Shown here: positions 21,924-64,000 of the stretch, piece after piece
Layout of the letters: the number at the start of each line of letters is the position of its first letter
Numbering within the stretch: the stretch's first letter is position 1
IMG/VR virus record: IMGVR_UViG_3300029984_000001
Coordinates: 199,572-263,571 of that record
Strand: one strand, 5' to 3'
Length of the DNA stretch: 64,000 bases
Translations under genes and position numbers: made by a program
The notes under the pieces: generated by a model
Databases searched by the model: none
What the model was told of the DNA's origin: nothing
The model's input: only the letters and a program-made list of their open reading frames with translations

Positions 21924-22429
21924 TGAGTAATTCAGTAACAATAAAAAATGTAAATATATATCCGATAAAAGGACAAAAGGTTTATGAAATTAGCCCACCG
22001 TTAATTGGTATTTGTACAGACGTAGATTTAAATACTTTAATTATAAGAAGAATAATTAAATCTGGTCATAAGGTTGAGGAAAATTTACCAGATGGTAGAA
22101 AAATTGTTCTAAATCTTGAAAACTTTGAATGTGATAATACCGTAGAAAGACCAATTATGACTACTATCGTGTCATCTAATACAAATTCAGAATTAGTTGA
22201 TAAATTGGTTAAATCTGAATCAACAATAAAAGAACTTAATGAAAAGATTGATAATCAAGAAGGTAATTATAGAGAGGCTGTAGCTTCTTATACATCATTA
22301 CTAAATGCAGCTAAAAGTGAAAGTTTAGAAAAAGATAAAAAAATAAAAGAGTTAACAGAAGAGAATGTAAAATTAAAAGAAGAAGTTAACACTTATGAAG
22401 AATTATCAAAAGAAGAACCAATTAAATAA
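21923..22429 (+). CDS. Hypothetical protein with C-terminal coiled coil
   Basis: Translationally coupled ORF. Confidence 0.7.
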   Translation: MSNSVTIKNVNIYPIKGQKVYEISPPLIGICTDVDLNTLIIRRIIKSGHKVEENLPDGRKIVLNLENFECDNTVERPIMTTIVSSNTNSELVDKLVKSESTIKELNEKIDNQEGNYREAVASYTSLLNAAKSESLEKDKKIKELTEENVKLKEEVNTYEELSKEEPIK

Positions 22430-22433
22430 AAAA

Positions 22434-22463
22434 TATAGAGCACATTAGTGCTCTATTATTTTA
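22434..22463. terminator. Bidirectional terminator
   Basis: atagagcac-atta-gtgctctat. Confidence 0.7.
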
Positions 22464-22611
22464 TCTTATAAATGTGTATTGTCATCGTACATTAATAGTT
22501 ATCCCCCTTTCGTTTATTTGGATAACATTAATGTTTAGTGTTTACCATATACTTCAACTCCTTTATAATATAATCATTTAGTGTTAAATTAAGATGATTA
22601 TTATTGTTTAT

Positions 22612-22630
22612 TCATAATTATAATATATAA
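22612..22630 (-). promoter_or_regulatory. Early-type promoter
   Basis: Minus strand ttatatattata atta tga. Confidence 0.55.
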
Positions 22631-22656
22631 TTATAAATCGGGAGTTTTACAAAATC

Positions 22657-22863
22657 TTAATAAAATTCTATAGGAGTTAATTTCTTTTGTGTTTGTGGGA
22701 GTATTAAAGTAAAATTATATAATGCTTGTACTGTTTCATTACTAGATACATGAACATTCTTTCCACCTAAATCTATATAGTATCTTTTAGAATTTATATA
22801 TTCATCTAATTCTTTATTAGATTCAATTGTATAAGCTACTTTAGCGGTTAACTGATCACCATC
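22657..22863 (-). CDS. rpoC: RNA polymerase beta' N-terminal subunit, exon 2
   Basis: Begins DGDQ, completing GDY|DGD. Confidence 0.9.
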   Translation of the reverse strand, partial: DGDQLTAKVAYTIESNKELDEYINSKRYYIDLGGKNVHVSSNETVQALYNFTLILPQTQKKLTPIEFY

Positions 22864-22977
22864 CACACATTAACCTATTGTGAACGCAACTTCACCAGAA
22901 GATTTTCATCTTCCCAGACTATATCATCCCTTATGGGCTACCTCTTTCGAATCTATCATAAGCTTATAGATCCTACT

Positions 22978-23850
22978 CTACTCAATATTAAAGTTATATT
23001 TATTTGATATTTCGGTATGAGATTCTTTTCTTTTTATCCTACCAATTATACTTCTTTGTTGTTGAAATTCCCCTGGTAGTTTCAATTCATCTATAATTGC
23101 TCTAGTTGAATATCCTTTAGATAATAATTTACAAATGTTTTCTACATATGGAAAGAAATCTATTTGAGGTTTCTTCTCTTTAAATTTATATAATGTGGAT
23201 ATATGTTTCCATCTTTTACCTTTAATAATATGACTTACATTAAATCTATTATTTTCAGTATTTTCCATATTAGATTTTATTAAAGCATTTCCATATGAAT
23301 CTCCATCTTGAACATATTTGCAAATACTATGTACTTGTTCTTCTGTCCATTTACTCATACCATTATTTTCTCCATAAGTATTTTCTCCAGTACCCCAACC
23401 TCCATCTTCCTTGACAAATCTTGATTCAACATGTTTAGAAAATTCTCTATCTGTATCTTTATTTTGAAACTCATGTTCAAGATTTTCTAGTTGAGTACAC
23501 CATTCTAAATTACCATAGAATGCATCTGATCTACATAAATTTTTATGGTTTACTTGAGTTTTATTTATTGGGTCTGGATTAAATACATACATGGTAGCAA
23601 CCAAAATATGTACAAAGAAAGATTTTCTAGTAGAATCATTTAATTGTAAAGATACTGATAAATATCCATTAGATAGTGCTACCGATAATAAATTACCTTC
23701 TATATTTAAAAATCTACCATAATTACTTATCTTATAACCTGTTCTGATATTATAACATTGTAAATCTACCCATTGTTCTATAGGATTAGGATATTCTATT
23801 AATGGGTTTATACCTTGTGAGAAATCGTCTCTTATCATAAAACTTTTCAT
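22978..23850 (-). CDS. Intron-encoded HNH homing endonuclease (NUMOD4-like N-terminus)
   Basis: YKISNYGR, VHILVA, QVNHKN...NLEWCTQLENLEH; located between intron elements R and S. Confidence 0.92.
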   Translation of the reverse strand: MKSFMIRDDFSQGINPLIEYPNPIEQWVDLQCYNIRTGYKISNYGRFLNIEGNLLSVALSNGYLSVSLQLNDSTRKSFFVHILVATMYVFNPDPINKTQVNHKNLCRSDAFYGNLEWCTQLENLEHEFQNKDTDREFSKHVESRFVKEDGGWGTGENTYGENNGMSKWTEEQVHSICKYVQDGDSYGNALIKSNMENTENNRFNVSHIIKGKRWKHISTLYKFKEKKPQIDFFPYVENICKLLSKGYSTRAIIDELKLPGEFQQQRSIIGRIKRKESHTEISNKYNFNIE

Positions 23851-23866
23851 TTATTCTCATCTCCTT

Positions 23867-23885
23867 TCGTGTATATAATATATAA
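23867..23885 (-). promoter_or_regulatory. Early-type promoter inside the intron, driving the HNH gene
   Basis: Minus strand ttatatattata taca cga followed by SD aaggag. Confidence 0.65.
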
Positions 23886-24094
23886 CTTTAATATCTTTTG
23901 ATAGTCGTTGAACGTTCCCTATACATCATCATATAAGGCTTCGATGCTGATTACCCAATTATTAATCATTCTCAAGCATTCACGCTTATAGTTTCCCATT
24001 ACGTTGTAGCTGATTAACTTACAAGGGCGTTCCAGCAGTTAAGGTAGTTTTTGTTTCGACGCACATCGTCAAGAAGACTACAATGGTGAGGTTT

Positions 24095-25522
24095 ATAGTC
24101 TCCTTCTACTTTTTTGAGATGCAAATTACTGATGTTTAAAGTATCTCTAAATCTAGATGATGTATTAGTACCTATATCTTCCTCTCTTATTTTTGGATAA
24201 TAAGGATAGAATTCATTATTTATATAAATACCTTCTGTTTCTACTGTAGATGAAATTCTAATTTTATTTGGGAATTGACCGAAATAAGTATTCATAGGAT
24301 ATCTTGTTAATAATACATGTTTATCTTTAGACATTTCTACAGCAGCCATATAAAAAATATCACACCAACATAATCTTCTATGATAAATAGATGATACATC
24401 TTCTTTATCCATTTCATCTTTAGTATCTGTATGAGGAGCATTGTTACCTTTAAAGTACATATATCTCATTTCACCTGTAGTTAATTCTACTTCTATAGGA
24501 ATGAATCTATTTGAATATCCATGTATAAATCTTTTCATTTGTTTTTTAATTACATCATCTGAAAATTGCACATAAGGATTCTTTACTTGTACTACTTTAG
24601 GATTACCCTTATCATCATATAATACTTTTTCATTAGTACCACCGAATTCATTTTCAAAGAATCTTCTACACCAGAATAATATATACGGATATAGATTTGC
24701 TAAGGCTGATGCTAACGGTAAAGCACAATGTCTTAAATCAACCATTAAATCATCTACTGATTCTACATTTAATTCAGGAGCCGATATAACTAATCTAGAA
24801 GAATAATCTGAAGTCTTTGCCATAACTGTTCTTTTTATGATTCCATATTTCTTTCCTAGATTTGGTTCTTGAGTAAACCAATCATATACTCTAACTAATA
24901 ATTCCTGTATTCTTCCTATAGTAGCAGATGTCATTGAAAATCCAAAATCATCGGATTCTCTTAATGCAGCTGAGGCTATAATTAAAGAATTATATATCTT
25001 ATTAATTTCTCCTACTCCTAAAGTTTTATTTCCAGTATTTACATCTCTATAGTATGCAGGTATTACTATATACTTATCTAAAAATAATGTATTATTCTTT
25101 TTATTTCTATTTATAAAATCTATATTTATATCTCTTTTGAGAGAGTCTGTAGATTTTATTTTTATCTTATCTATATTATTTTTTAAGAAGTCTACCCCAT
25201 TTTCTCCATTCTCATCTTCTTCTAATTGTCCTTGAGAATTAATCTTAAAATTCTTAGTCCCATGAACACATTCTTTTATTTTTCTATCCATTCTACACCA
25301 TATTTTATATGATAATGGATCTATGAAATTTTTGTGTAGGTCAATATAGGCAAATATATTGGCTCTTTGATCTTTAGATAAACCAAAAACTTCATTAGAT
25401 AATAAACCGTCTGATGTAGGTACTCCATTACTAAAAAAATATATAGGATTGGTAATCTGTTTTAAATTATTCTCTTTAATTAATCGACTAGGACTTAATG
25501 TCTCTAACTCTAAATGTTTCAT
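24095..25522 (-). CDS. rpoC: RNA polymerase beta' N-terminal subunit, exon 1 (probably virion RNAP); spliced product 544 aa
   Basis: DGLLSNEVFG, VIPAYYRD, KTSDYSSRLVIS, VLLTRYP, GDY; in a late structural operon. Confidence 0.9.
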
Positions 25523-25564
25523 ATTAAAACTCCTTTCTCATTTTGATATAAAAAAGGGATCAGG

Positions 25565-25858
25565 TTATACACCTGATACCTCTTTCATTGTTATTCCTAT
25601 AGTATCATTATTAATGTTAAATTCTACCTGATATTTTTTATCATATACAGATGATGCATTGATTACAGGTATTGATTTGGTCTTCTTTTTTAATTCAAAA
25701 TATATAGAATCATCAACTATATTTATGTTTTTCATATTAAAGTCATTAAATAAAGAACAGACTCCATATGATGTCATAATAGCTTCATAATTATTAGCGA
25801 AATATTCACAATCGTTAATATTATTAGATTCTATGAATTTCATTCTATCCATTACCAT
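25565..25858 (-). CDS. Hypothetical protein
   Basis: SD aaggag; in operon. Confidence 0.65.
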   Translation of the reverse strand: MVMDRMKFIESNNINDCEYFANNYEAIMTSYGVCSLFNDFNMKNINIVDDSIYFELKKKTKSIPVINASSVYDKKYQVEFNINNDTIGITMKEVSGV

Positions 25859-29156: not shown

Positions 29157-30890
29157 ATGAAATTAAAAGATATGAAATTTGGTATTAAGGTAGATAATGA
29201 TTGGATTGAATGTGTAATTGGAAATAGTATTTATTATTCAAATAAATTAAGTATAAAATTTGATATTGAGGAAATTCTTGATATTCTTAATATTATAAGT
29301 AATTATTATAAATATACTAAAATAAGTTTTCATGTAGATGAAAACTGCCTTGGATATAAAATAACACATGATACTATTAGTTTATTGGCTGTAGAAATAA
29401 AGCCAGATGAAGAAATGATAAGTTGGATAATTAAAAATAAATCTAATGAATCTTATAATATAGAGATTCTATATAGAGAGCCAACTGTAATGGGGTTTCC
29501 CAATTTTATAAAAGAAAAGAAGAATACAGATAAGATTAAAGAGGAGACGATTAAAATGAAATTAAAAGAAATAATGTTTGGTATTAGATTTAGATCTATA
29601 AAGAGTGAATGTAACTGGCTTAAACGTTTTGATAAAGATGAAGTACTTCCATTGATGTTTGATATTCATATGACATTATACTCTTATAATGAAATAAAAG
29701 TATTTTTATCATTATATAATGAAGATGATATTGATATATGTTATGATGAAGATTGTGTTGGATACAAAATGACCCATAAAGATAGTAATTCAATAACACA
29801 ATTAAGTACTAGAGAATTAAAAGATCTATTTGATTTAGAATATGAAAATAATATACTTGAACCCATATACAATAATGAAGAGATGAAAAGTGATAATAAA
29901 ATGAAATTAAAAGACATGAAATTCTGTATTAAAAATATAAAAATAGATAAATGGGTTGGGAAGATAAAATATCACGAAACCATAGATCATGTAATAGAAT
30001 CAATAACATATGTCGATGATTATGAACATGAATATAATATTGATGAAATATTTGAAATATTTGATACTCAATCAGATATATCAGATTTTGAATTATATTG
30101 TGGTGAAAAATGTATTGGATATAGAATTACCTACGATAATAGTACACATAAATTTACACCTAGCAATTTAGTAGAGTTAGTCAGAATAAGTAAAGAACAA
30201 ATATTAAATTCAACCTATAAAGTTGAAATTGAAGTATTATATAAATGTGATATTATTTATGAAAATAAAGAAATAGAAGGAGATAATATTATAGACGAAA
30301 TTAAATATATTATTATGATAAAAACATGTTGCGATGATTGGGAATTTATTGGATATGAAGGGCAATATTCTTATTATCCAAGGAAAAAAGATATTATTAA
30401 TGCTAGAAAATTTAATAAAGATGATATTGATGTTCATCTAGGGAGAATATTATCATATTGTATGAATTTAGAACCTATAGAAATAAAAATACTAAAATAT
30501 GAAAATAATGGTAATTTAATAGCAAAACAATATAAAGAATTTAAAATTGATGAAGAAGAATTTGTATATAAGAATGATCCTATTATAAAACATATTGTAG
30601 ATTATTATCAAATAGTGCATAAAATAAAAGATTATTCGAAAATAGGTATGTTCCTAGATAGTATATATAATATAGCAATTGATGATAAAAACTATTTTTC
30701 AACATTTATAATAGCTTTATTTGAAGGTTTTCATCCTAAAATAACTCAATATCAAACAGATAAAGATTGTGTTTATAGAAAAATAAAAAATATGGATTTT
30801 GATATAGATGATATAAATAAATTATTTGAACAATCTCCATTAGAATTAAAATTACTAACAGAAATGTACAATTATCAAAATCAAGAATAA
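29157..30890 (+). CDS. Protein with three tandem MKLK[DE]xxF domains
   Basis: Repeat starts at 29157, 29556 and 29901, each with C[LVI]GY[KR]xT. Confidence 0.75.
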   Translation: MKLKDMKFGIKVDNDWIECVIGNSIYYSNKLSIKFDIEEILDILNIISNYYKYTKISFHVDENCLGYKITHDTISLLAVEIKPDEEMISWIIKNKSNESYNIEILYREPTVMGFPNFIKEKKNTDKIKEETIKMKLKEIMFGIRFRSIKSECNWLKRFDKDEVLPLMFDIHMTLYSYNEIKVFLSLYNEDDIDICYDEDCVGYKMTHKDSNSITQLSTRELKDLFDLEYENNILEPIYNNEEMKSDNKMKLKDMKFCIKNIKIDKWVGKIKYHETIDHVIESITYVDDYEHEYNIDEIFEIFDTQSDISDFELYCGEKCIGYRITYDNSTHKFTPSNLVELVRISKEQILNSTYKVEIEVLYKCDIIYENKEIEGDNIIDEIKYIIMIKTCCDDWEFIGYEGQYSYYPRKKDIINARKFNKDDIDVHLGRILSYCMNLEPIEIKILKYENNGNLIAKQYKEFKIDEEEFVYKNDPIIKHIVDYYQIVHKIKDYSKIGMFLDSIYNIAIDDKNYFSTFIIALFEGFHPKITQYQTDKDCVYRKIKNMDFDIDDINKLFEQSPLELKLLTEMYNYQNQE

Positions 30891-30930
30891 TAAAATTAAA
30901 GAGGGTGTTTTGCATCCTCTTTCTTTTTTG

Positions 30931-30942
30931 AACTTTAGAATA
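30931..30942 (+). promoter_or_regulatory. Late promoter AACT-N6-TA
   Basis: aact ttagaa ta. Confidence 0.65.
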
Positions 30943-30955
30943 AGAGGTGATTAAT

Positions 30956-33574
30956 ATGCCAAGATATAACGCTAATGAAATTGTAAATGAATCAAGTAAA
31001 TCAAATGAAAAACATTTATATTTTCTATCTAAAGATAATATGGATAATAAAACATTATATCCTAGAGTACCTGAGAATTATTTCACTAAGAATGGTCATG
31101 AAGATAATGAAACTAAAAGAGTTTGTTTTGCTACTTCTATACATAAAGCATTGATGGCTATTTCTATGAGAATGAAAGATATGATATTATATGTACATGT
31201 CCCTAAAACTATGAATATAGAGACATATAAACCTACAACAAAACAAGTTCCTGATTGTAAGATAACTGGAGAAACATGGGTTACTCATCCTATAGGACTA
31301 AAATGTATAGGGAAAATAAAAGTAATAGATGATTCTGGAAAAGATGGTCATAAATTTAAATACGGGGATAAAGAAGCTGAATTGTATGATTGGGACTGGG
31401 AATGGATTGAGAAGGATAAAGATATTATAAAGGAAAGATCTATAGTGAAAGAAAATCTATTAATTTCCGATAAAGATTTTTCAAATAATTTAGAGAAATG
31501 GGAGGATAGTAATTATCCAGTTTTATTAATCACAGGTCTATCGGGCGGTGGAAAGTCTACATTAGCTAATCAATTAGCTAAAGAATATAAAGCTGATGTA
31601 GTAGAATTAGATCAATTAGAATATAATCATAATAATTCAAAAAATAACTTTCTTAAAAAATTTATGGAAAGCGACTCAAAATATAATCAATATAATCATA
31701 TAAGTGAATATTGGAAAGACAAGAATGATAATACAGATAAAGATAAATTAATAAAAACAGTAAAAGAATATATTCATTTCTGTGTATCTTATGCTTTAAA
31801 GAACAATATTAAAACTATAATAGAAGGTATACAAATATATCAATTAATGTATACTAAAGAGGATTTGATTTATATGACTGATAAACCTATAATAATTATG
31901 GGGTCATCTCCTCTAATATCAAAATTAAGACAATTTAAAAGAATAATAAGTGGAGGTAACGGTGGACAAACATTAAAAACACTTATTCAAGATAATAATT
32001 ATTTAAGTGATTTTAGAAATGACATAAAATCTACAATAAAAGAAACAAAGGAGGATGATGAAATGGGTATTAGATTTAATTTAAATGAAAATAAAGAAAT
32101 TATAGTAAGACCACAATATGAATTATGTTTATTAGAATCAGGAGTATCTTATCAAAAGAAATATAAATGTCCTTATTGTGAAACTAGATTAGATAGACAA
32201 AAACTTATAACTCATATTTTAGATGAGCATGAAGATTTCATACCAGAAAATTATACTGCTACTAGAATTGTATTTAATATAATAAATAAAAAAGAAAAAG
32301 GTAGTTGTGTTATATGTGGTAAAGAAACTTTATGGGATGAGAATAAAGCTAAGTATGATAGATTCTGTTGTGAGAAATGTGTACAAGATTATAGAAAACA
32401 AAGAGATGAAGCTATGATACGAACAAAAGGTAAATTATATGTAACAGATGATCCAGAATTTCAAAAGAAGATGTTAGCTAATAGAGGAATATCTGGAGAA
32501 TATATATGGTCAGATGGAATAAAGAGAACTTATACTGGTAGTTATGAAAAGAAATTATTAGAGTTCTTGGATGAAGTAATGGGATTTAAATCATTGGATG
32601 TTATTACACCAGGTGATACAGTTTTATACGAAGATAATGAAGGTAAAGAACGTGCTTGGATATTGGATGTAACGATTATTCCTTATAATTTACAAATAGA
32701 TGCTAAAGATGGAGGGGATAATCCTAATAATAGAGAGATGCCTGAATATAGGGCTAAACAAACATCAAAAGAGAAAGCCATATTTGAACAAGGTAAATAT
32801 AATTATCTAAGACTTACTAATAATAACTTTGGGCAATTAATAAATACTCTGGCTCAAATTAAATTAAATCTATTAGATAATAAACAAGATAAAATATGGC
32901 ACGTAAATGAATATATGGCTATGAGTGGAGTTAATCCTGTGGTTACTAAAACAGCAGATTCTAAACCAGTATCTTACATAGTTCCTTGTATGATTCAAAA
33001 TTCATTTGTAGAGCCATTATATTCTAGAGATCAATATTTAGAAAAATTATATAGAATTGTAGATGGTAAATTAATATTAACTAATAGATCTGAAGTTAAG
33101 AAACAATTCGATGTATCTACTAAACTATTAAAATCTAGTGTAGCTGATAAAGTAAAAATCGGTATAGATGAATTAATTACTAAAGAACAATATGTAGATC
33201 ATAACATGATGTTTGAAATGTTAACAGGTCATCAATTATTAGATAAGAATCAATATTTCTTTGACGAGAATTTAGAGGTGGAATTGGAGGGTTTTTATAA
33301 ATCTAAAATAAGAAGGGATATTATAGAAGCTACTTTTTCAAATCTTCTAAATCAATATAAAGTATCTATTTGTGAGAATGCTCATAATATTAAATATAAA
33401 AATTTGACAATATTAAGAGATAATAAAGGATTCTATGCTTATAATGAAGAAACGAATAAAAGAACTGGAAGTTATGAATTAATAAACGAGATACCAGATG
33501 AAGTATTGGATTTATTGAATGATGATGATTTCTTAGATACAGATGATGATTTTAACTTTGAAGAAATCAGTTAG
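30956..33574 (+). CDS. Multidomain protein: ART-like domain, P-loop kinase, Zn fingers, PD-(D/E)xK-like nuclease
   Basis: LYPRVP...RVCFATS...DCKITGETW; ITGLSGGGKST; CPYC..H..H and CVIC..FCCEKC; YE...ILD...QIDAKD. Confidence 0.7.
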   Translation: MPRYNANEIVNESSKSNEKHLYFLSKDNMDNKTLYPRVPENYFTKNGHEDNETKRVCFATSIHKALMAISMRMKDMILYVHVPKTMNIETYKPTTKQVPDCKITGETWVTHPIGLKCIGKIKVIDDSGKDGHKFKYGDKEAELYDWDWEWIEKDKDIIKERSIVKENLLISDKDFSNNLEKWEDSNYPVLLITGLSGGGKSTLANQLAKEYKADVVELDQLEYNHNNSKNNFLKKFMESDSKYNQYNHISEYWKDKNDNTDKDKLIKTVKEYIHFCVSYALKNNIKTIIEGIQIYQLMYTKEDLIYMTDKPIIIMGSSPLISKLRQFKRIISGGNGGQTLKTLIQDNNYLSDFRNDIKSTIKETKEDDEMGIRFNLNENKEIIVRPQYELCLLESGVSYQKKYKCPYCETRLDRQKLITHILDEHEDFIPENYTATRIVFNIINKKEKGSCVICGKETLWDENKAKYDRFCCEKCVQDYRKQRDEAMIRTKGKLYVTDDPEFQKKMLANRGISGEYIWSDGIKRTYTGSYEKKLLEFLDEVMGFKSLDVITPGDTVLYEDNEGKERAWILDVTIIPYNLQIDAKDGGDNPNNREMPEYRAKQTSKEKAIFEQGKYNYLRLTNNNFGQLINTLAQIKLNLLDNKQDKIWHVNEYMAMSGVNPVVTKTADSKPVSYIVPCMIQNSFVEPLYSRDQYLEKLYRIVDGKLILTNRSEVKKQFDVSTKLLKSSVADKVKIGIDELITKEQYVDHNMMFEMLTGHQLLDKNQYFFDENLEVELEGFYKSKIRRDIIEATFSNLLNQYKVSICENAHNIKYKNLTILRDNKGFYAYNEETNKRTGSYELINEIPDEVLDLLNDDDFLDTDDDFNFEEIS

Positions 33575-62377: not shown

Positions 62378-64000
62378 TTATTTGCCAAATATGTTAGACA
62401 TTATATTTGAGACATATGCTTGAGTCCCTAAGAAACTATTAAATGTCACTTTGTTTTTAGTACTTTCCTTTAAATTGTAATAGTAGTATTTTATACTTCT
62501 TTGAATATCCACATTATTCACATTTATACCACATAAATTTGCAAGGTAATCCATTTCAGCTGTATTAGTTAACATATTACTTATCTGACTTTCTTGAGAT
62601 AATGAGAATACATTATATAATTCTTTTATAGTAAAAGTAACATCTATTGTTGTTGGTAATCCATTTAATGTCCATGATCCTTTGTCTCCTTTATTTATAG
62701 ACATGTTTGTGATTATACCCATATCTATATCAAACATTCCTTTATAATAAGCTCTGATTAAAAATGGTGAGGTATATCCGTTACCATTTAATTGAACTGG
62801 AGCTACTAATCCCAATAAATGACATAAGGGTACATATAAATCCATATAAATTGAAAAAGGAGTTGGATCTGGAGTTCTTAATTTAACCGTAACTTCATAA
62901 GATTTACTAAATTCAGAATCATTCCATATTTCAGGAAATATTAATTTACCACCAGTAGCAACAGTTAATGCACCTTCTGTTAATCTATCAGCAATTCCAT
63001 TCGGTAATATACTACTAAATTTATCCACAAAAGCATCTAAAGATTTTTTAGAAGTATCATAGTTTTCTTTTTTAAAAGCTTCAAATTGTGCACCAGATGT
63101 TGATCCTAATAAAAATTGAATTTCCCTAGACATATCACTTAAATTATTCATTGAACCTGCTAATGAACTTTGACCTATACTATTTGTAAATGATTCTTGT
63201 ATTTGAGTTTCTGAGTCTATATAAATAGCAATAGATTCTTTAGACGAAATAAAAGATTGAATAGGTACATCTCTAAAATTCGACCAATTATAATTACTAA
63301 GTGATGTTCCATCTATAGTTCTATCACCTAAATTCATAAGTCTTGCGATGTTTTTTAACATAGGATTTACTACGTCAAAATATATATCATATGCAAATTC
63401 TAGAGAATAAAATTTACCATTAGAATTGTTTAATAATTGATTTAAAGTACTCTCATCATTTTGGGCTAAAGACGATAATACGTTTTTCTTATCACTAGAA
63501 TTAAATTTTTTCATAAATTTAGGTTTACCTGGTGTAATTAATAATAGTGGCATATTTTGTACTAATTTTTCTGCATATTTTCTACCAAAAGCAGTTGGTT
63601 TATTATCTATAATTAATTTAGGGTCACAATTATCCATATATTGATACGGCATACCAAATATACCTCTTTTAGAATGTAATATTTGTTGTGTTGCAGTTGA
63701 TGAAGTTGAAAAGAAATCATAATTAGATGATAAATTAAATTGAGCTTTTTCATCACTCACTTGATCTGTTGTTGTCACAGTTGATATATTATTAGTTTCA
63801 ACAATATATTTATTTACAATAGAACTAGAATCGAACCATCCTTTATCTTGTACATAAAACCAATTTCCAGATTTTTTTGTTACTTTAACTTCTTCACCTT
63901 TTGTTAAGCTTCCAATAATACTAGAATTAGTATTGGCATTTTCTAATAATTGTATAACAGAAGTATTTATATATATAAGATAATCTATATATTCTAAATC
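62378..64000 (-). CDS. Baseplate tail-tube initiator (gp48-like) with N-terminal SH3b domain; 5' end outside the window
   Basis: Frame open to nt 64000 with ANTNSSIIGSLTKGEEVKV...GNWFYV..KGW; C-terminal PFLIRAY...GIITNMSI...NGLPTTIDVTFTIKEL. Confidence 0.7.
   Translation of the reverse strand, partial: DLEYIDYLIYINTSVIQLLENANTNSSIIGSLTKGEEVKVTKKSGNWFYVQDKGWFDSSSIVNKYIVETNNISTVTTTDQVSDEKAQFNLSSNYDFFSTSSTATQQILHSKRGIFGMPYQYMDNCDPKLIIDNKPTAFGRKYAEKLVQNMPLLLITPGKPKFMKKFNSSDKKNVLSSLAQNDESTLNQLLNNSNGKFYSLEFAYDIYFDVVNPMLKNIARLMNLGDRTIDGTSLSNYNWSNFRDVPIQSFISSKESIAIYIDSETQIQESFTNSIGQSSLAGSMNNLSDMSREIQFLLGSTSGAQFEAFKKENYDTSKKSLDAFVDKFSSILPNGIADRLTEGALTVATGGKLIFPEIWNDSEFSKSYEVTVKLRTPDPTPFSIYMDLYVPLCHLLGLVAPVQLNGNGYTSPFLIRAYYKGMFDIDMGIITNMSINKGDKGSWTLNGLPTTIDVTFTIKELYNVFSLSQESQISNMLTNTAEMDYLANLCGINVNNVDIQRSIKYYYYNLKESTKNKVTFNSFLGTQAYVSNIMSNIFGK

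What the first reader, a model, noticed from the sequence alone, without database searches (positions are those of the whole stretch)
23850..23885. Intron endonuclease has its own early-type promoter inside a late gene
Seen: a perfect early motif and SD lie between intron element R and the HNH start. Established: T4 intron endonucleases are restricted to late expression, and an intron endonuclease in a phiPA3 RNAP gene mediates interference against co-infecting phiKZ. Inference: immediate expression lets this nuclease cut intron-less RNAP genes of competing phages before replication. It also carries the M[KQ]xFMxR[DE] tag.
Basis: partly seen in the sequence, partly recalled or inferred. Interest (0 to 1): 0.7.

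Follow-up and report, generated by a model that had tools for sequence, protein, structure and literature searches.

The report
Intron nuclease gene with own promoter
A self-splicing intron in the virion RNA polymerase gene of an uncultured giant phage carries a DNA-cutting enzyme gene with its own near-consensus "early" promoter, an arrangement already measured in the related Bacillus phage AR9, so this is a new example rather than a new principle.

Summary
The window is the end of a 263.6-kb, 26% GC, AR9/PBS1-like jumbo phage from peat metagenomes.

- **Gene and intron.** On the minus strand, the orthologue of AR9 g145 (virion RNA polymerase beta' N-terminal part) is split by a 1231-nt group I intron (24094..22864). 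The split falls inside the catalytic DYDGD codons.
- **Nuclease and promoter.** The intron holds a 290-aa HNH/NUMOD4 endonuclease gene (23850..22978). Eighteen nt upstream of its ATG lies a match to the genome's early-promoter family, TTATATATTATA-N4-TG. That family has 40 sites against 2.3 expected, and 39 are intergenic.
- **The flaw.** This site alone has C instead of T at -1. It scores near the bottom of the family, though far above chance.
- **Comparative support.** An 82%-identical co-occurring relative has the same intron with the ORF deleted and the promoter and Shine-Dalgarno (SD) sequence decayed. A 43%-identical HNH in the same intron site of another relative has a canonical early motif. 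Two others have late-type motifs.
- **Limits.** Timing here is untested, because no RNA run was listed. Competitor exclusion is plausible but inferred.
- **Tag.** The N-terminal tag is real, lineage-specific and unexplained.

The parts
24095..25522 (-). Exon 1 (476 codons) of the virion RNA polymerase beta' N-terminal subunit gene; ends ...GGA GAC TAT (G D Y)
   Evidence: tblastn gives 30-34% identity to AR9-like phage beta' genes. The only AR9 hit is g145, annotated as a virion RNAP subunit. The spliced product aligns end to end with uninterrupted relatives.
22864..24094 (-). Group I intron, 1231 nt, IA-like, inserted between the DY and DGD codons of the catalytic motif
   Evidence: P1 pairs exon GACUAU with the internal guide GUAGUC (24081..24076), with U.G at the splice site. 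The last base is G. Splicing restores GDYDGDQ, as in intron-less alleles. A contig in run X15 skips 1277 nt and has 46 letters left unaligned between its two matching parts; 1277 minus 46 equals the 1231-nt intron.
23902..24037 (-). Intron core P4-P5-P6 and element R (P7 5' strand, GTTCAACGACTA at 23913..23902)
   Evidence: Local Rfam Intron_gpI match of 33.6 bits, E 3.2e-7, model positions 60-148. The whole intron misses the gathering score because the ORF splits it.
23868..23890 (-). Early-type (virion-RNAP) promoter motif, positions -22 to +1; core TATATATTAT at 23884..23875; predicted start G at 23868; C at -1 (23869), where the family has T
   Evidence: Genome-wide family and PWM. AR9 consensus AAATATATATTAT-N6-G. 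Identical in all HNH-bearing contigs laid.
23861..23867 (-). Shine-Dalgarno sequence AAAGGAG, 10 nt before the ATG and starting 1 nt after the predicted transcript start
   Evidence: Predicted mostly unpaired in both the short transcript and the read-through pre-mRNA.
22978..23850 (-). HNH homing endonuclease gene, 290 aa, NUMOD4 + HNH_3, I-HmuI-like; the first 8 codons (23850..23827) encode the tag MKSFMIRD
   Evidence: PHROG 59 at E 8e-29. Pfam NUMOD4 and HNH_3 score just below cut-off. PDB 1U3E I-HmuI at E 0.004, with the HNH residues aligned. Seventy-one homologues were found.
22864..22977 (-). Intron 3' part: conserved hairpin 22973..22949, P3 3' strand AGGTAG 22943..22938, P8 22937..22928, P7 3' strand ATAGTC 22922..22917, P9 hairpin, terminal G 22864
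   Evidence: Read from the sequence. Weak Rfam match to element S and P9. Colinear with the ORF-less sister intron, with compensatory changes in the hairpin, P2 and P8.
22657..22863 (-). Exon 2 (68 codons + stop), begins GAT GGT GAT CAG (D G D Q)
25559..25577 (-). Terminator-like hairpin plus T run between the upstream ORF and the beta' start; no recognisable late motif in the 42 nt that follow
22435..22456 (.). Bidirectional terminator-like hairpin; first terminator downstream of the predicted HNH transcript start

Best explanation
The intron carries a self-contained expression cassette: an early-type promoter, an SD sequence and the HNH gene.

- **Transcription (inferred).** The virion RNA polymerase injected with the DNA recognises the TTATATATTATA-N4-YG element. 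It starts at G 23868 and makes an mRNA with an 18-nt leader. That mRNA runs through the HNH gene, the 3' half of the intron and exon 2, to the terminator near 22456.
- **Timing (inferred).** The nuclease is therefore made from the first minutes of infection, independently of its host gene. The host gene is the virion-RNAP beta' subunit, which is transcribed late in AR9. Because the SD sequence is not masked in the read-through pre-mRNA, expression probably continues late.
- **Promoter strength (inferred).** The C at -1 is a transition that keeps pyrimidine-purine at -1/+1. It probably makes this a weaker member of the promoter family.
- **Nuclease action (inferred).** The enzyme resembles I-HmuI and PhiPA3 gp210. 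It would nick or cut intron-less copies of the conserved DYDGD-coding site in co-infecting relatives. That would drive homing and may handicap the competitor.

Shown here: the intron, the HNH gene, the motif family and this site's place in it, the decay of promoter and SD sequence in the ORF-less sister intron, and recurrence in a relative. Inferred: promoter activity, timing, cleavage specificity and any competitive effect.
For: - Motif family: 40 sites against 2.3 expected, 39 intergenic and correctly placed.
- This site scores 17.5 bits against 0.15 chance hits per genome.
- Leader geometry (start G followed at once by the SD sequence) is shared with other family members, for example w14409, w56634, 32507 and 120879.
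- The AR9 consensus is nearly the same, and the motif is conserved in all sampled relatives of the clade.
- The ORF-less sister intron L009/L029 (82% aa identity in exon 1) keeps the flanks at about 90%. It has the core changed at 5 positions and the SD sequence at 2, so the motif serves the ORF and not the ribozyme.
- L052 has a 43%-identical HNH in the same intron site of a 47%-identical beta' gene. It carries TTATATATTATAATAGTGA 61 nt before its ATG.
- AR9 g190/g189 is a measured precedent. Its promoter is active although it deviates at +1. Position -1 varies among verified AR9 early promoters: T about 27, A about 10, G 1.
- An orthologous promoter in relative L023 also has CG in place of TG.
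- No late-type motif, sigma-70-like site or SD-masking structure offers an alternative route.
Against: - C at -1 is unique among 40 sites in this genome and absent from 39 verified AR9 promoters.
- The AR9 authors report that one substitution in the consensus abolished a predicted promoter, g057.
- The site scores near the bottom of the family.
- No transcript data exist; no RNA run was listed.
- The same C is present in the decayed L009 copy, so it is old. It says nothing about activity.
- The host gene's late status is by orthology only.
- The other three HNH genes of this genome show no early motif within 60 nt.
Confidence: 0.65

Rival explanations
1. Crippled or relic promoter. The motif is a former early promoter inactivated by the T-to-C change at -1. 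The HNH is now translated only from the late pre-mRNA or the excised intron, as is usual for intron ORFs.
For: The C at -1 is unique among 40 sites. The score is low within the family. AR9 virion RNAP is reported to be intolerant of at least one single change. The SD sequence is accessible in read-through RNA, so no separate promoter is needed for translation.
Against: All other informative positions are intact, whereas the ORF-less sister copy decayed at 5 core positions and 2 SD positions over the same divergence. AR9 promoters vary at -1, and g190 and g044 work with deviant start points. The region is invariant in all sampled contigs.
Confidence: 0.25
2. Chance AT-rich match in a 26% GC genome, with no function.
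For: The bare 10-mer core is expected about 42 times by composition. A 12-mer search in the window alone was not significant.
Against: The full pattern is 17-fold over expectation and 39/40 intergenic. The PWM null gives 0.15 per genome, which is about 7e-5 for the 244-nt stretch concerned. The distance and orientation to the start are right, and a relative shows the same arrangement.
Confidence: 0.03
3. The sequence is part of the intron's RNA structure (P7.1/P7.2 region) and is conserved for splicing, not transcription.
For: It lies in the peripheral region between P7 and P3, where IA introns have extra helices.
Against: The sister intron in an essential gene lacks the motif. Folding shows no stable helix involving it. 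The motif is the same as at 39 non-intron sites.
Confidence: 0.03
4. The promoter is active, but its main product is regulatory. The early transcript covers the intron 3' half and exon 2 and modulates splicing or beta' expression. The HNH is incidental.
For: The transcript would read through exon 2 to the terminator at 22456 with no terminator in between.
Against: The start lies 1 nt before a good SD sequence and an intact, conserved 290-aa ORF. The motif and SD sequence decay together once the ORF is lost.
Confidence: 0.04

Closest known systems
Bacillus phage AR9 g190 (HNH-AP2 homing endonuclease) in an intron of g189 (virion RNAP beta subunit, late gene); Lavysh et al. 2017, PMC5312081
   Same: Jumbo phage of the same clade, with the same two-polymerase scheme. 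An HNH gene inside a group I intron of a virion-RNAP subunit gene is preceded by the same early consensus and a short leader (27 nt there, 18 nt here). In both, the promoter deviates at the start region (+1 A in AR9, -1 C here). Early expression was measured in AR9.
   Different: The subunit differs (beta in AR9, beta' N here). The HNH family differs (AP2-type there, NUMOD4/I-HmuI-like here). Expression is unmeasured here. The N-terminal tag is absent from AR9.
AR9 g146 and g147, endonucleases in the two introns of g145 (the orthologous gene)
   Same: Same host gene. The intron ORFs have promoters of their own.
   Different: Those promoters are late type (AACA-N6-TA) and the genes are late (0.35/43/722 and 0.54/48/469). 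The intron positions differ, and the endonucleases are VSR-like and Hef-like. Relatives L031 and L032 resemble this late pattern.
PhiPA3 gp210, HNH intron endonuclease in a virion RNAP gene; Birkholz et al. 2024, PMC11620839
   Same: An HNH in an intron at conserved catalytic aspartate codons of a virion-RNAP gene. It nicks the intron-less homologue of a co-infecting phage and gives a competitive advantage.
   Different: PhiPA3 is a nucleus-forming chimallivirus and the subunit is beta. The paper text contains no occurrence of the word 'promoter'. No activity data exist here.
T4 intron endonucleases (I-TevI etc.)
   Same: Independent expression of an intron ORF from a promoter inside the intron (own knowledge: Gott et al. 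1988).
   Different: T4 uses late promoters plus masking of the ribosome-binding site in early transcripts. Here there is no late motif and no masking.
I-HmuI (PDB 1U3E), SPO1 DNA polymerase intron
   Same: Nearest solved relative of the catalytic half. It is a nicking HNH with the same order of motifs.
   Different: Similarity is weak (E 0.004). The C-terminal half differs, and the target is unknown here.

Membership tests
Group I intron | P1 helix pairing the 5' exon end with an internal guide, with U.G at the splice site | tested here: met
   Exon GACUAU pairs with guide GUAGUC at 24081..24076. The same pairing is seen in L009 and L053.
Group I intron | Terminal G, and precise restoration of the reading frame | tested here: met
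   The intron ends in G at 22864. The spliced 544-aa product is colinear with uninterrupted relatives, with no gap at GDY|DGDQ.
Group I intron | Conserved catalytic core (P3-P9, elements P, Q, R, S) recognised by the Rfam model | tested here: inconclusive
   The 5' core gives a local hit of 33.6 bits at E 3.2e-7. The 3' part scores only 10.1 bits. The whole intron is below the gathering score of 50 because the ORF splits it. Related introns at the same site score 77 and 71 bits.
Group I intron | Self-splicing | not testable with these tools
   No RNA run was listed. Only DNA-level intron-less alleles were seen.
HNH homing endonuclease (NUMOD4/HNH_3, I-HmuI-like) | HNH catalytic motif and family profile match | tested here: met
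   PHROG 59 at 8e-29 and PHROG 959 at 7e-21. 1U3E aligns VH...NHKN...NLEW...EN. Pfam NUMOD4 (20.2 bits) and HNH_3 (18.6 bits) score just under their cut-offs of 23.4 and 24.8.
HNH homing endonuclease (NUMOD4/HNH_3, I-HmuI-like) | Cleaves or nicks the intron-less allele at or near the insertion site | not testable with these tools
   Only candidate targets were found: near-identical junctions in L013, L011 and others.
AR9-type virion-RNAP early promoter | AT-rich core ...TATATATTAT, 6-nt spacer, G at +1 | tested here: met
   Core at 23884..23875, spacer ATACAC, G at 23868. AR9 consensus.
AR9-type virion-RNAP early promoter | This genome's extended consensus, including the invariant T at -1 | tested here: not met
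   The site has C at -1, where 39/39 others have T, and A at -20, where T is usual.
AR9-type virion-RNAP early promoter | Primary 5' end at the predicted start, present early and without protein synthesis | not testable with these tools
   No RNA run was listed.
AR9 g190-type arrangement (early HEG in intron of a late virion-RNAP gene) | Host gene is a virion-RNAP subunit expressed late | tested here: inconclusive
   Orthology to g145 is clear, and g145 is late in AR9. No late motif is recognisable upstream here.
T4-type control of intron ORFs | Late promoter in the intron, and ribosome-binding site masked in longer transcripts | tested here: not met
   No late-type motif scores 6 or more between 23850 and 24094. 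The SD sequence is largely unpaired in read-through folds.

The most novel reading that the evidence does not exclude
Promoter, SD sequence and HNH gene form a mobile cassette that moves independently of the ribozyme. Homologous HNH genes (about 43-46% identical) sit in three different peripheral places of homologous introns at the same insertion site:
- the P6 loop in L052, L053 and L032;
- between P7 and P3 in this window;
- the P8 loop in L031.

They carry either early-type or late-type promoters. On this reading, each phage lineage tunes when its intron nuclease acts.

In this lineage, all four HNH genes and at least six other proteins also share an added N-terminal peptide, M[KQN]xFMxR[DE]. 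It may be a common targeting, processing or turnover signal for a set of mostly early proteins.
Probability: 0.2. Interest if true: 0.6.

Novelty: new member of a known kind. Interest (0 to 1): 0.35.

Why it matters
Intron homing endonucleases are usually treated as passengers of their host gene. In AR9-like jumbo phages they instead carry class-specific phage promoters. This locus adds an uncultured example of the early type, together with three natural comparison points:
- a sister intron that lost the gene and let the promoter decay;
- relatives with late-type promoters before a homologous nuclease;
- an intron-less allele about 88% identical, seen in one peat run (X15) that also holds parts of this phage.

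If early expression is real, the nuclease would meet an incoming competitor genome before that genome replicates. That timing question was not addressed in the PhiPA3 work. The result also shows that the AR9 early and late promoter grammar extends to distant uncultured relatives. That helps annotate expression classes in metagenomic jumbo phages.

Tried and rejected
- Rfam at gathering score on the whole window found nothing. An E-value scan of 22500-24300 also found no intron hit. Only short sub-windows gave local Intron_gpI hits.
- Megablast of the locus against sequenced phages found no match.
- The search for RNA sequencing runs listed none, so timing could not be tested.
- The 99%-identical HNH variant contig (L050) differs only by a 9-nt in-frame deletion. 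It gives no information on the promoter.
- More DNA runs showed no variation in 23851..23890.
- SD masking in read-through RNA was not found.
- A host-type sigma-70 promoter was not found; there were fewer hits than in shuffles.
- A late-type motif in the intron was not found.
- The first 12-mer search in the window alone was not significant. The longer pattern on the whole genome was needed.
- The joint 22983>23891, which looked like an ORF-less variant of this phage, is the L009-like relative, with 61 other letters in between.
- The tag as simple paralogy was rejected. Tagged proteins belong to different families, and outside homologues of this HNH lack it.
- The tag pattern is absent from AR9 and from four relatives at 44-51% identity.
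- PHROG annotation of the neighbouring minus-strand genes found nothing, so the operon's class could not be read from its content.
- tblastn of the 504-aa tagged protein against sequenced phages found no match.

Full report
**Where the window comes from**

The window is the last 64 kb of a 263,571-bp contig with 25.8% GC. Near-identical DNA is held by many peat-metagenome runs and by IMG/VR and JGI contigs. The gene under the finding gives 30-34% identity by tblastn to the beta' genes of Listeria phage LPJP1, Bacillus phages Goe21, BpSp, AR9 and PBS1, and Staphylococcus jumbo phages. The single AR9 hit is g145, annotated as the virion RNA polymerase beta' N-terminal subunit. In AR9, g145 is itself joined from three pieces around two endonuclease-bearing introns.

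**The split gene and the intron**

All features lie on the minus strand.
- Exon 1 is 25522..24095 and ends in GGA GAC TAT.
- The next 1231 nt (24094..22864) are a group I intron.
- Exon 2 (22863..22657) begins GAT GGT GAT CAG.

Four observations support the intron:
- The exon end GACUAU pairs with an internal guide GUAGUC (24081..24076), with the usual U.G at the splice site, and the insert ends in G.
- Joining the exons gives a 544-aa protein with GDYDGDQ. It aligns without a gap at the junction to uninterrupted genes of relatives of 544-553 aa.
- Rfam's Intron_gpI model matches 24037..23902 locally (33.6 bits, E 3.2e-7; P4-P6 and element R). It matches the 3' part weakly at element S and P9. 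The whole intron is missed at gathering score because the ORF splits it.
- A contig in run X15 is about 88% identical in exon 1. It skips 1277 nt and has 46 letters left unaligned between its two matching parts. The difference is exactly the 1231-nt intron.

The same few codons are a hot spot. Other introns sit at or within 6 nt of this site in L010, L021/22, L024/25, L031, L032, L036, L045/46 and L049.

**The nuclease**

ORF 23850..22978 encodes 290 aa.
- It matches PHROG 59 (HNH endonuclease, E 8e-29).
- It matches Pfam NUMOD4 and HNH_3 just under their cut-offs.
- Its catalytic half matches the nicking enzyme I-HmuI (1U3E, E 0.004), with the HNH residues aligned.
- Seventy-one homologues were found. 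The nearest outside this phage are 43-46% identical.

**The promoter motif**

AR9 early promoters, read by the injected virion polymerase, have the consensus AAATATATATTAT-N6-G(+1) (PMC5312081). In this genome the pattern T[AG]TATATTAT-N5-YG occurs 40 times against 2.3 expected from a first-order model. Thirty-nine of the 40 sites are intergenic, although only 10% of the genome is non-coding. Nearly all lie 11-130 nt upstream of a same-strand start. The extended consensus is T-A-T-A-R-T-TATATATTAT-A-N4-T-G-A-A. The same element recurs in every sampled relative of the clade.

A second, late-type motif (AACAT-N3-A-a-TAA, equivalent to AR9's AACA-N6-TA) follows many terminators.

The site under test (23890..23868) matches as follows:
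- It has the perfect 10-nt core, A at -6, G at +1 and AA at +2/+3.
- The SD sequence starts 1 nt after the predicted start. Several other family members share this geometry.
- It is the only one of the 40 sites with C instead of T at -1, and it has A instead of the usual T at -20.
- A PWM built without it scores it 17.5 bits. Training sites range from 16.0 to 32.9, with a median of 28.2. Random sequence of genome size reaches that score 0.15 times.

The motif is therefore real and not chance, but it is not perfect.

**Does the C at -1 matter?**

This cannot be settled here.

Against activity:
- The position is invariant in this genome.
- No verified AR9 early promoter has C there.
- The AR9 authors note that a single substitution silenced a predicted promoter.

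For tolerance:
- Among the verified AR9 promoters, -1 is T about 27 times, A about 10 times and G once.
- AR9 promoters g044, g190 and g265 start at A instead of G and are active.
- In relative L023, an otherwise conserved orthologous promoter has CG where five sister contigs have TG.
- T to C keeps the pyrimidine-purine step at -1/+1. This last point is my own inference.

**Comparative evidence that the motif serves the ORF**

L009 (IMG/VR) and L029 (JGI) are 82% identical in exon 1 and carry the same intron at the same site, without the ORF. L029 comes from the same metagenome, Ga0302209, as the contig identical to the window.

Aligned to the window with the ORF removed, the two introns are colinear. 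The deletion runs from just after the SD sequence to the stop codon. The flanks are about 90% identical, with compensatory changes in P2, P8 and the hairpin after the stop. However, the promoter core reads GTATAATAAAT instead of TTATATATTAT, and the SD sequence reads AAGCGAG instead of AAAGGAG. Contigs of this ORF-less form occur in runs X2 and X18, at a depth like that of the HNH-bearing phage.

The ribozyme therefore does not need the motif. Once the ORF is gone, motif and SD sequence decay.

In L052, a phage whose beta' is 47% identical, a 43%-identical HNH sits in a homologous intron at the same site. It is preceded by the canonical TTATATATTATAATAGTGA 61 nt before its ATG.

Other relatives differ:
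- L053 has no such motif.
- L031 and L032 have late-type motifs directly before the SD sequence: AAACATCATAATAAAT and AACATTTATATAA.

The ORF also sits in different peripheral places:
- the P6 loop in L052, L053 and L032;
- between P7 and P3 in this window;
- the P8 loop in L031.

The nuclease cassette has therefore moved independently of the ribozyme core. These placements are read from the sequences.

**Alternative routes of expression**

- No late-type motif scores 6 or more between the 5' splice site and the ATG.
- No sigma-70-like site lies there, and there is no terminator between 23868 and 22456.
- Folding predicts the SD sequence to be mostly unpaired, both in a transcript starting at 23868 and in read-through RNA.

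So there is no T4-like masking, and the ORF could also be translated late from pre-mRNA.

**Is the host gene late?**

In AR9 all virion-RNAP subunit genes, including g145, are late (0/38/298 reads at 5/20/40 min). AR9 g145 and the L052 orthologue each have a clear late motif after a terminator, directly upstream.

Here the same architecture exists, with a terminator at 25577..25559 followed by 42 nt. However, the motif position reads ATCA-N6-GA, which is not recognisable. The nearest candidates are inside the upstream ORF (25730) and before the operon (28257). Late status is thus inferred from orthology.

**What is known already**

[quoted passage not shown] Read counts at 5/20/40 min are 291/406/427 for g190 against 0/24/390 for g189.

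In the gene orthologous to ours, the AR9 endonucleases g146 and g147 are late, each with its own late promoter. PhiPA3 gp210 shows that such a nuclease in a virion-RNAP gene can nick a competitor's intron-less homologue and confer an advantage.

The present locus is therefore a new member of a known kind. The inference about competitors is reasonable. Intron-less relatives keep a junction sequence close to the spliced one, and one intron-less allele occurs in a peat run that also holds this phage. It is still untested.

**The tag**

M[KQN]xFMxR[DE] heads at least 11 ORFs in this genome, each behind an SD sequence.
- It heads all four HNH genes, which belong to different families. Two of them carry imperfect copies (MKTFMTRI and MNVFMQRC).
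- It also heads proteins of 98-504 aa with no family match.
- Two copies are decapitated: w9439 and w17318.
- Positions 3 and 6 vary as whole codons, which argues for a peptide-level signal rather than an RNA-level one.
- Outside homologues of this HNH lack it.
- The DNA pattern is absent from AR9 and from four relatives at 44-51% identity. It occurs once in the fragment of the 82% relative.
- In the widespread 504-aa family (w14425), the tag is present in the 80% and 60% relatives and fades beyond them.
- Five of the nine perfect copies on intact ORFs follow an early motif.

Its function is unknown. I record it as unexplained.

**Verdict**

- The mechanism, an own early promoter driving an intron HNH, is likely (0.65) but unmeasured.
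- The kind is already known from AR9.

Noticed in passing
window 23850..23827, 14425, 38773, 9439, 17318; genome (G000:C1) 25878, 39778, 59673, 98683, 102902, 119600, 139572, 170014: The N-terminal peptide M[KQN]xFMxR[DE] heads at least 11 ORFs of unrelated families, including all four HNH genes. It is lineage-specific: absent from AR9 and from relatives at 44-51% identity. Two copies are cut off by a stop after 8 and 19 codons. Its function is unknown; a targeting, processing or turnover signal is possible.
   Followed up: partly
window 22635..22420, minus strand: A top-scoring early promoter (start at 22613) lies directly after the beta' stop codon. It drives about 170 nt holding only two mini-ORFs of 6 and 8 codons, each with an SD sequence, and ends at a bidirectional terminator (22456..22435). 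The RNA folds with z = -5.2. An early promoter at this position is conserved in relatives, so this is a candidate early small RNA or micropeptide transcript.
   Followed up: partly
window 25523..25577, minus strand: The beta' gene follows a terminator-like hairpin, but the place where AR9 and L052 have a late promoter reads ATCA-N6-GA. No recognisable late promoter lies directly upstream of this presumably late, essential gene.
   Followed up: partly
genome G000:C1 101072..104654; 29371..32433; 185535..188464: Other split genes are present. A gyrase/topoisomerase-like gene has an intron holding an HNH_3 gene (102893..103522). A ribonucleotide-reductase-like gene is in three pieces with ORF-less gaps. 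A third, minus-strand gene has a partial Intron_gpI hit. None of their ORFs has an early motif nearby.
   Followed up: partly
L052 2300..3450, L053 2290..3410, L031 4440..5620, L032 4440..5670: Homologous HNH genes occupy different peripheral loops of homologous introns at the same insertion site. They carry different promoter types: early, none seen, or late-type. This suggests that the nuclease cassettes move and are re-tuned independently of the ribozyme.
   Followed up: partly
L009 5420..5860; runs X2 and X18 at window 22983/23891: A sister phage with the ORF-less version of the same intron co-occurs in the same peat samples, at contig depth similar to the HNH-bearing phage. This fits the gain-decay-loss cycle of homing endonuclease genes.
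   Followed up: yes
window 23860..23786, minus strand: An out-of-frame ATG directly abuts the SD sequence (GGAG|ATG) and opens a 24-codon ORF overlapping the HNH start. It is probably not used, because the spacing is zero, but it could affect initiation.
   Followed up: no
genome G000:C1 about 64.5-66.1 kb: A second beta'-like gene with an ADFDGD motif, also apparently in pieces, lies downstream of an early promoter (start at 63013). It is presumably the non-virion polymerase subunit, which would match the AR9 scheme.
   Followed up: no
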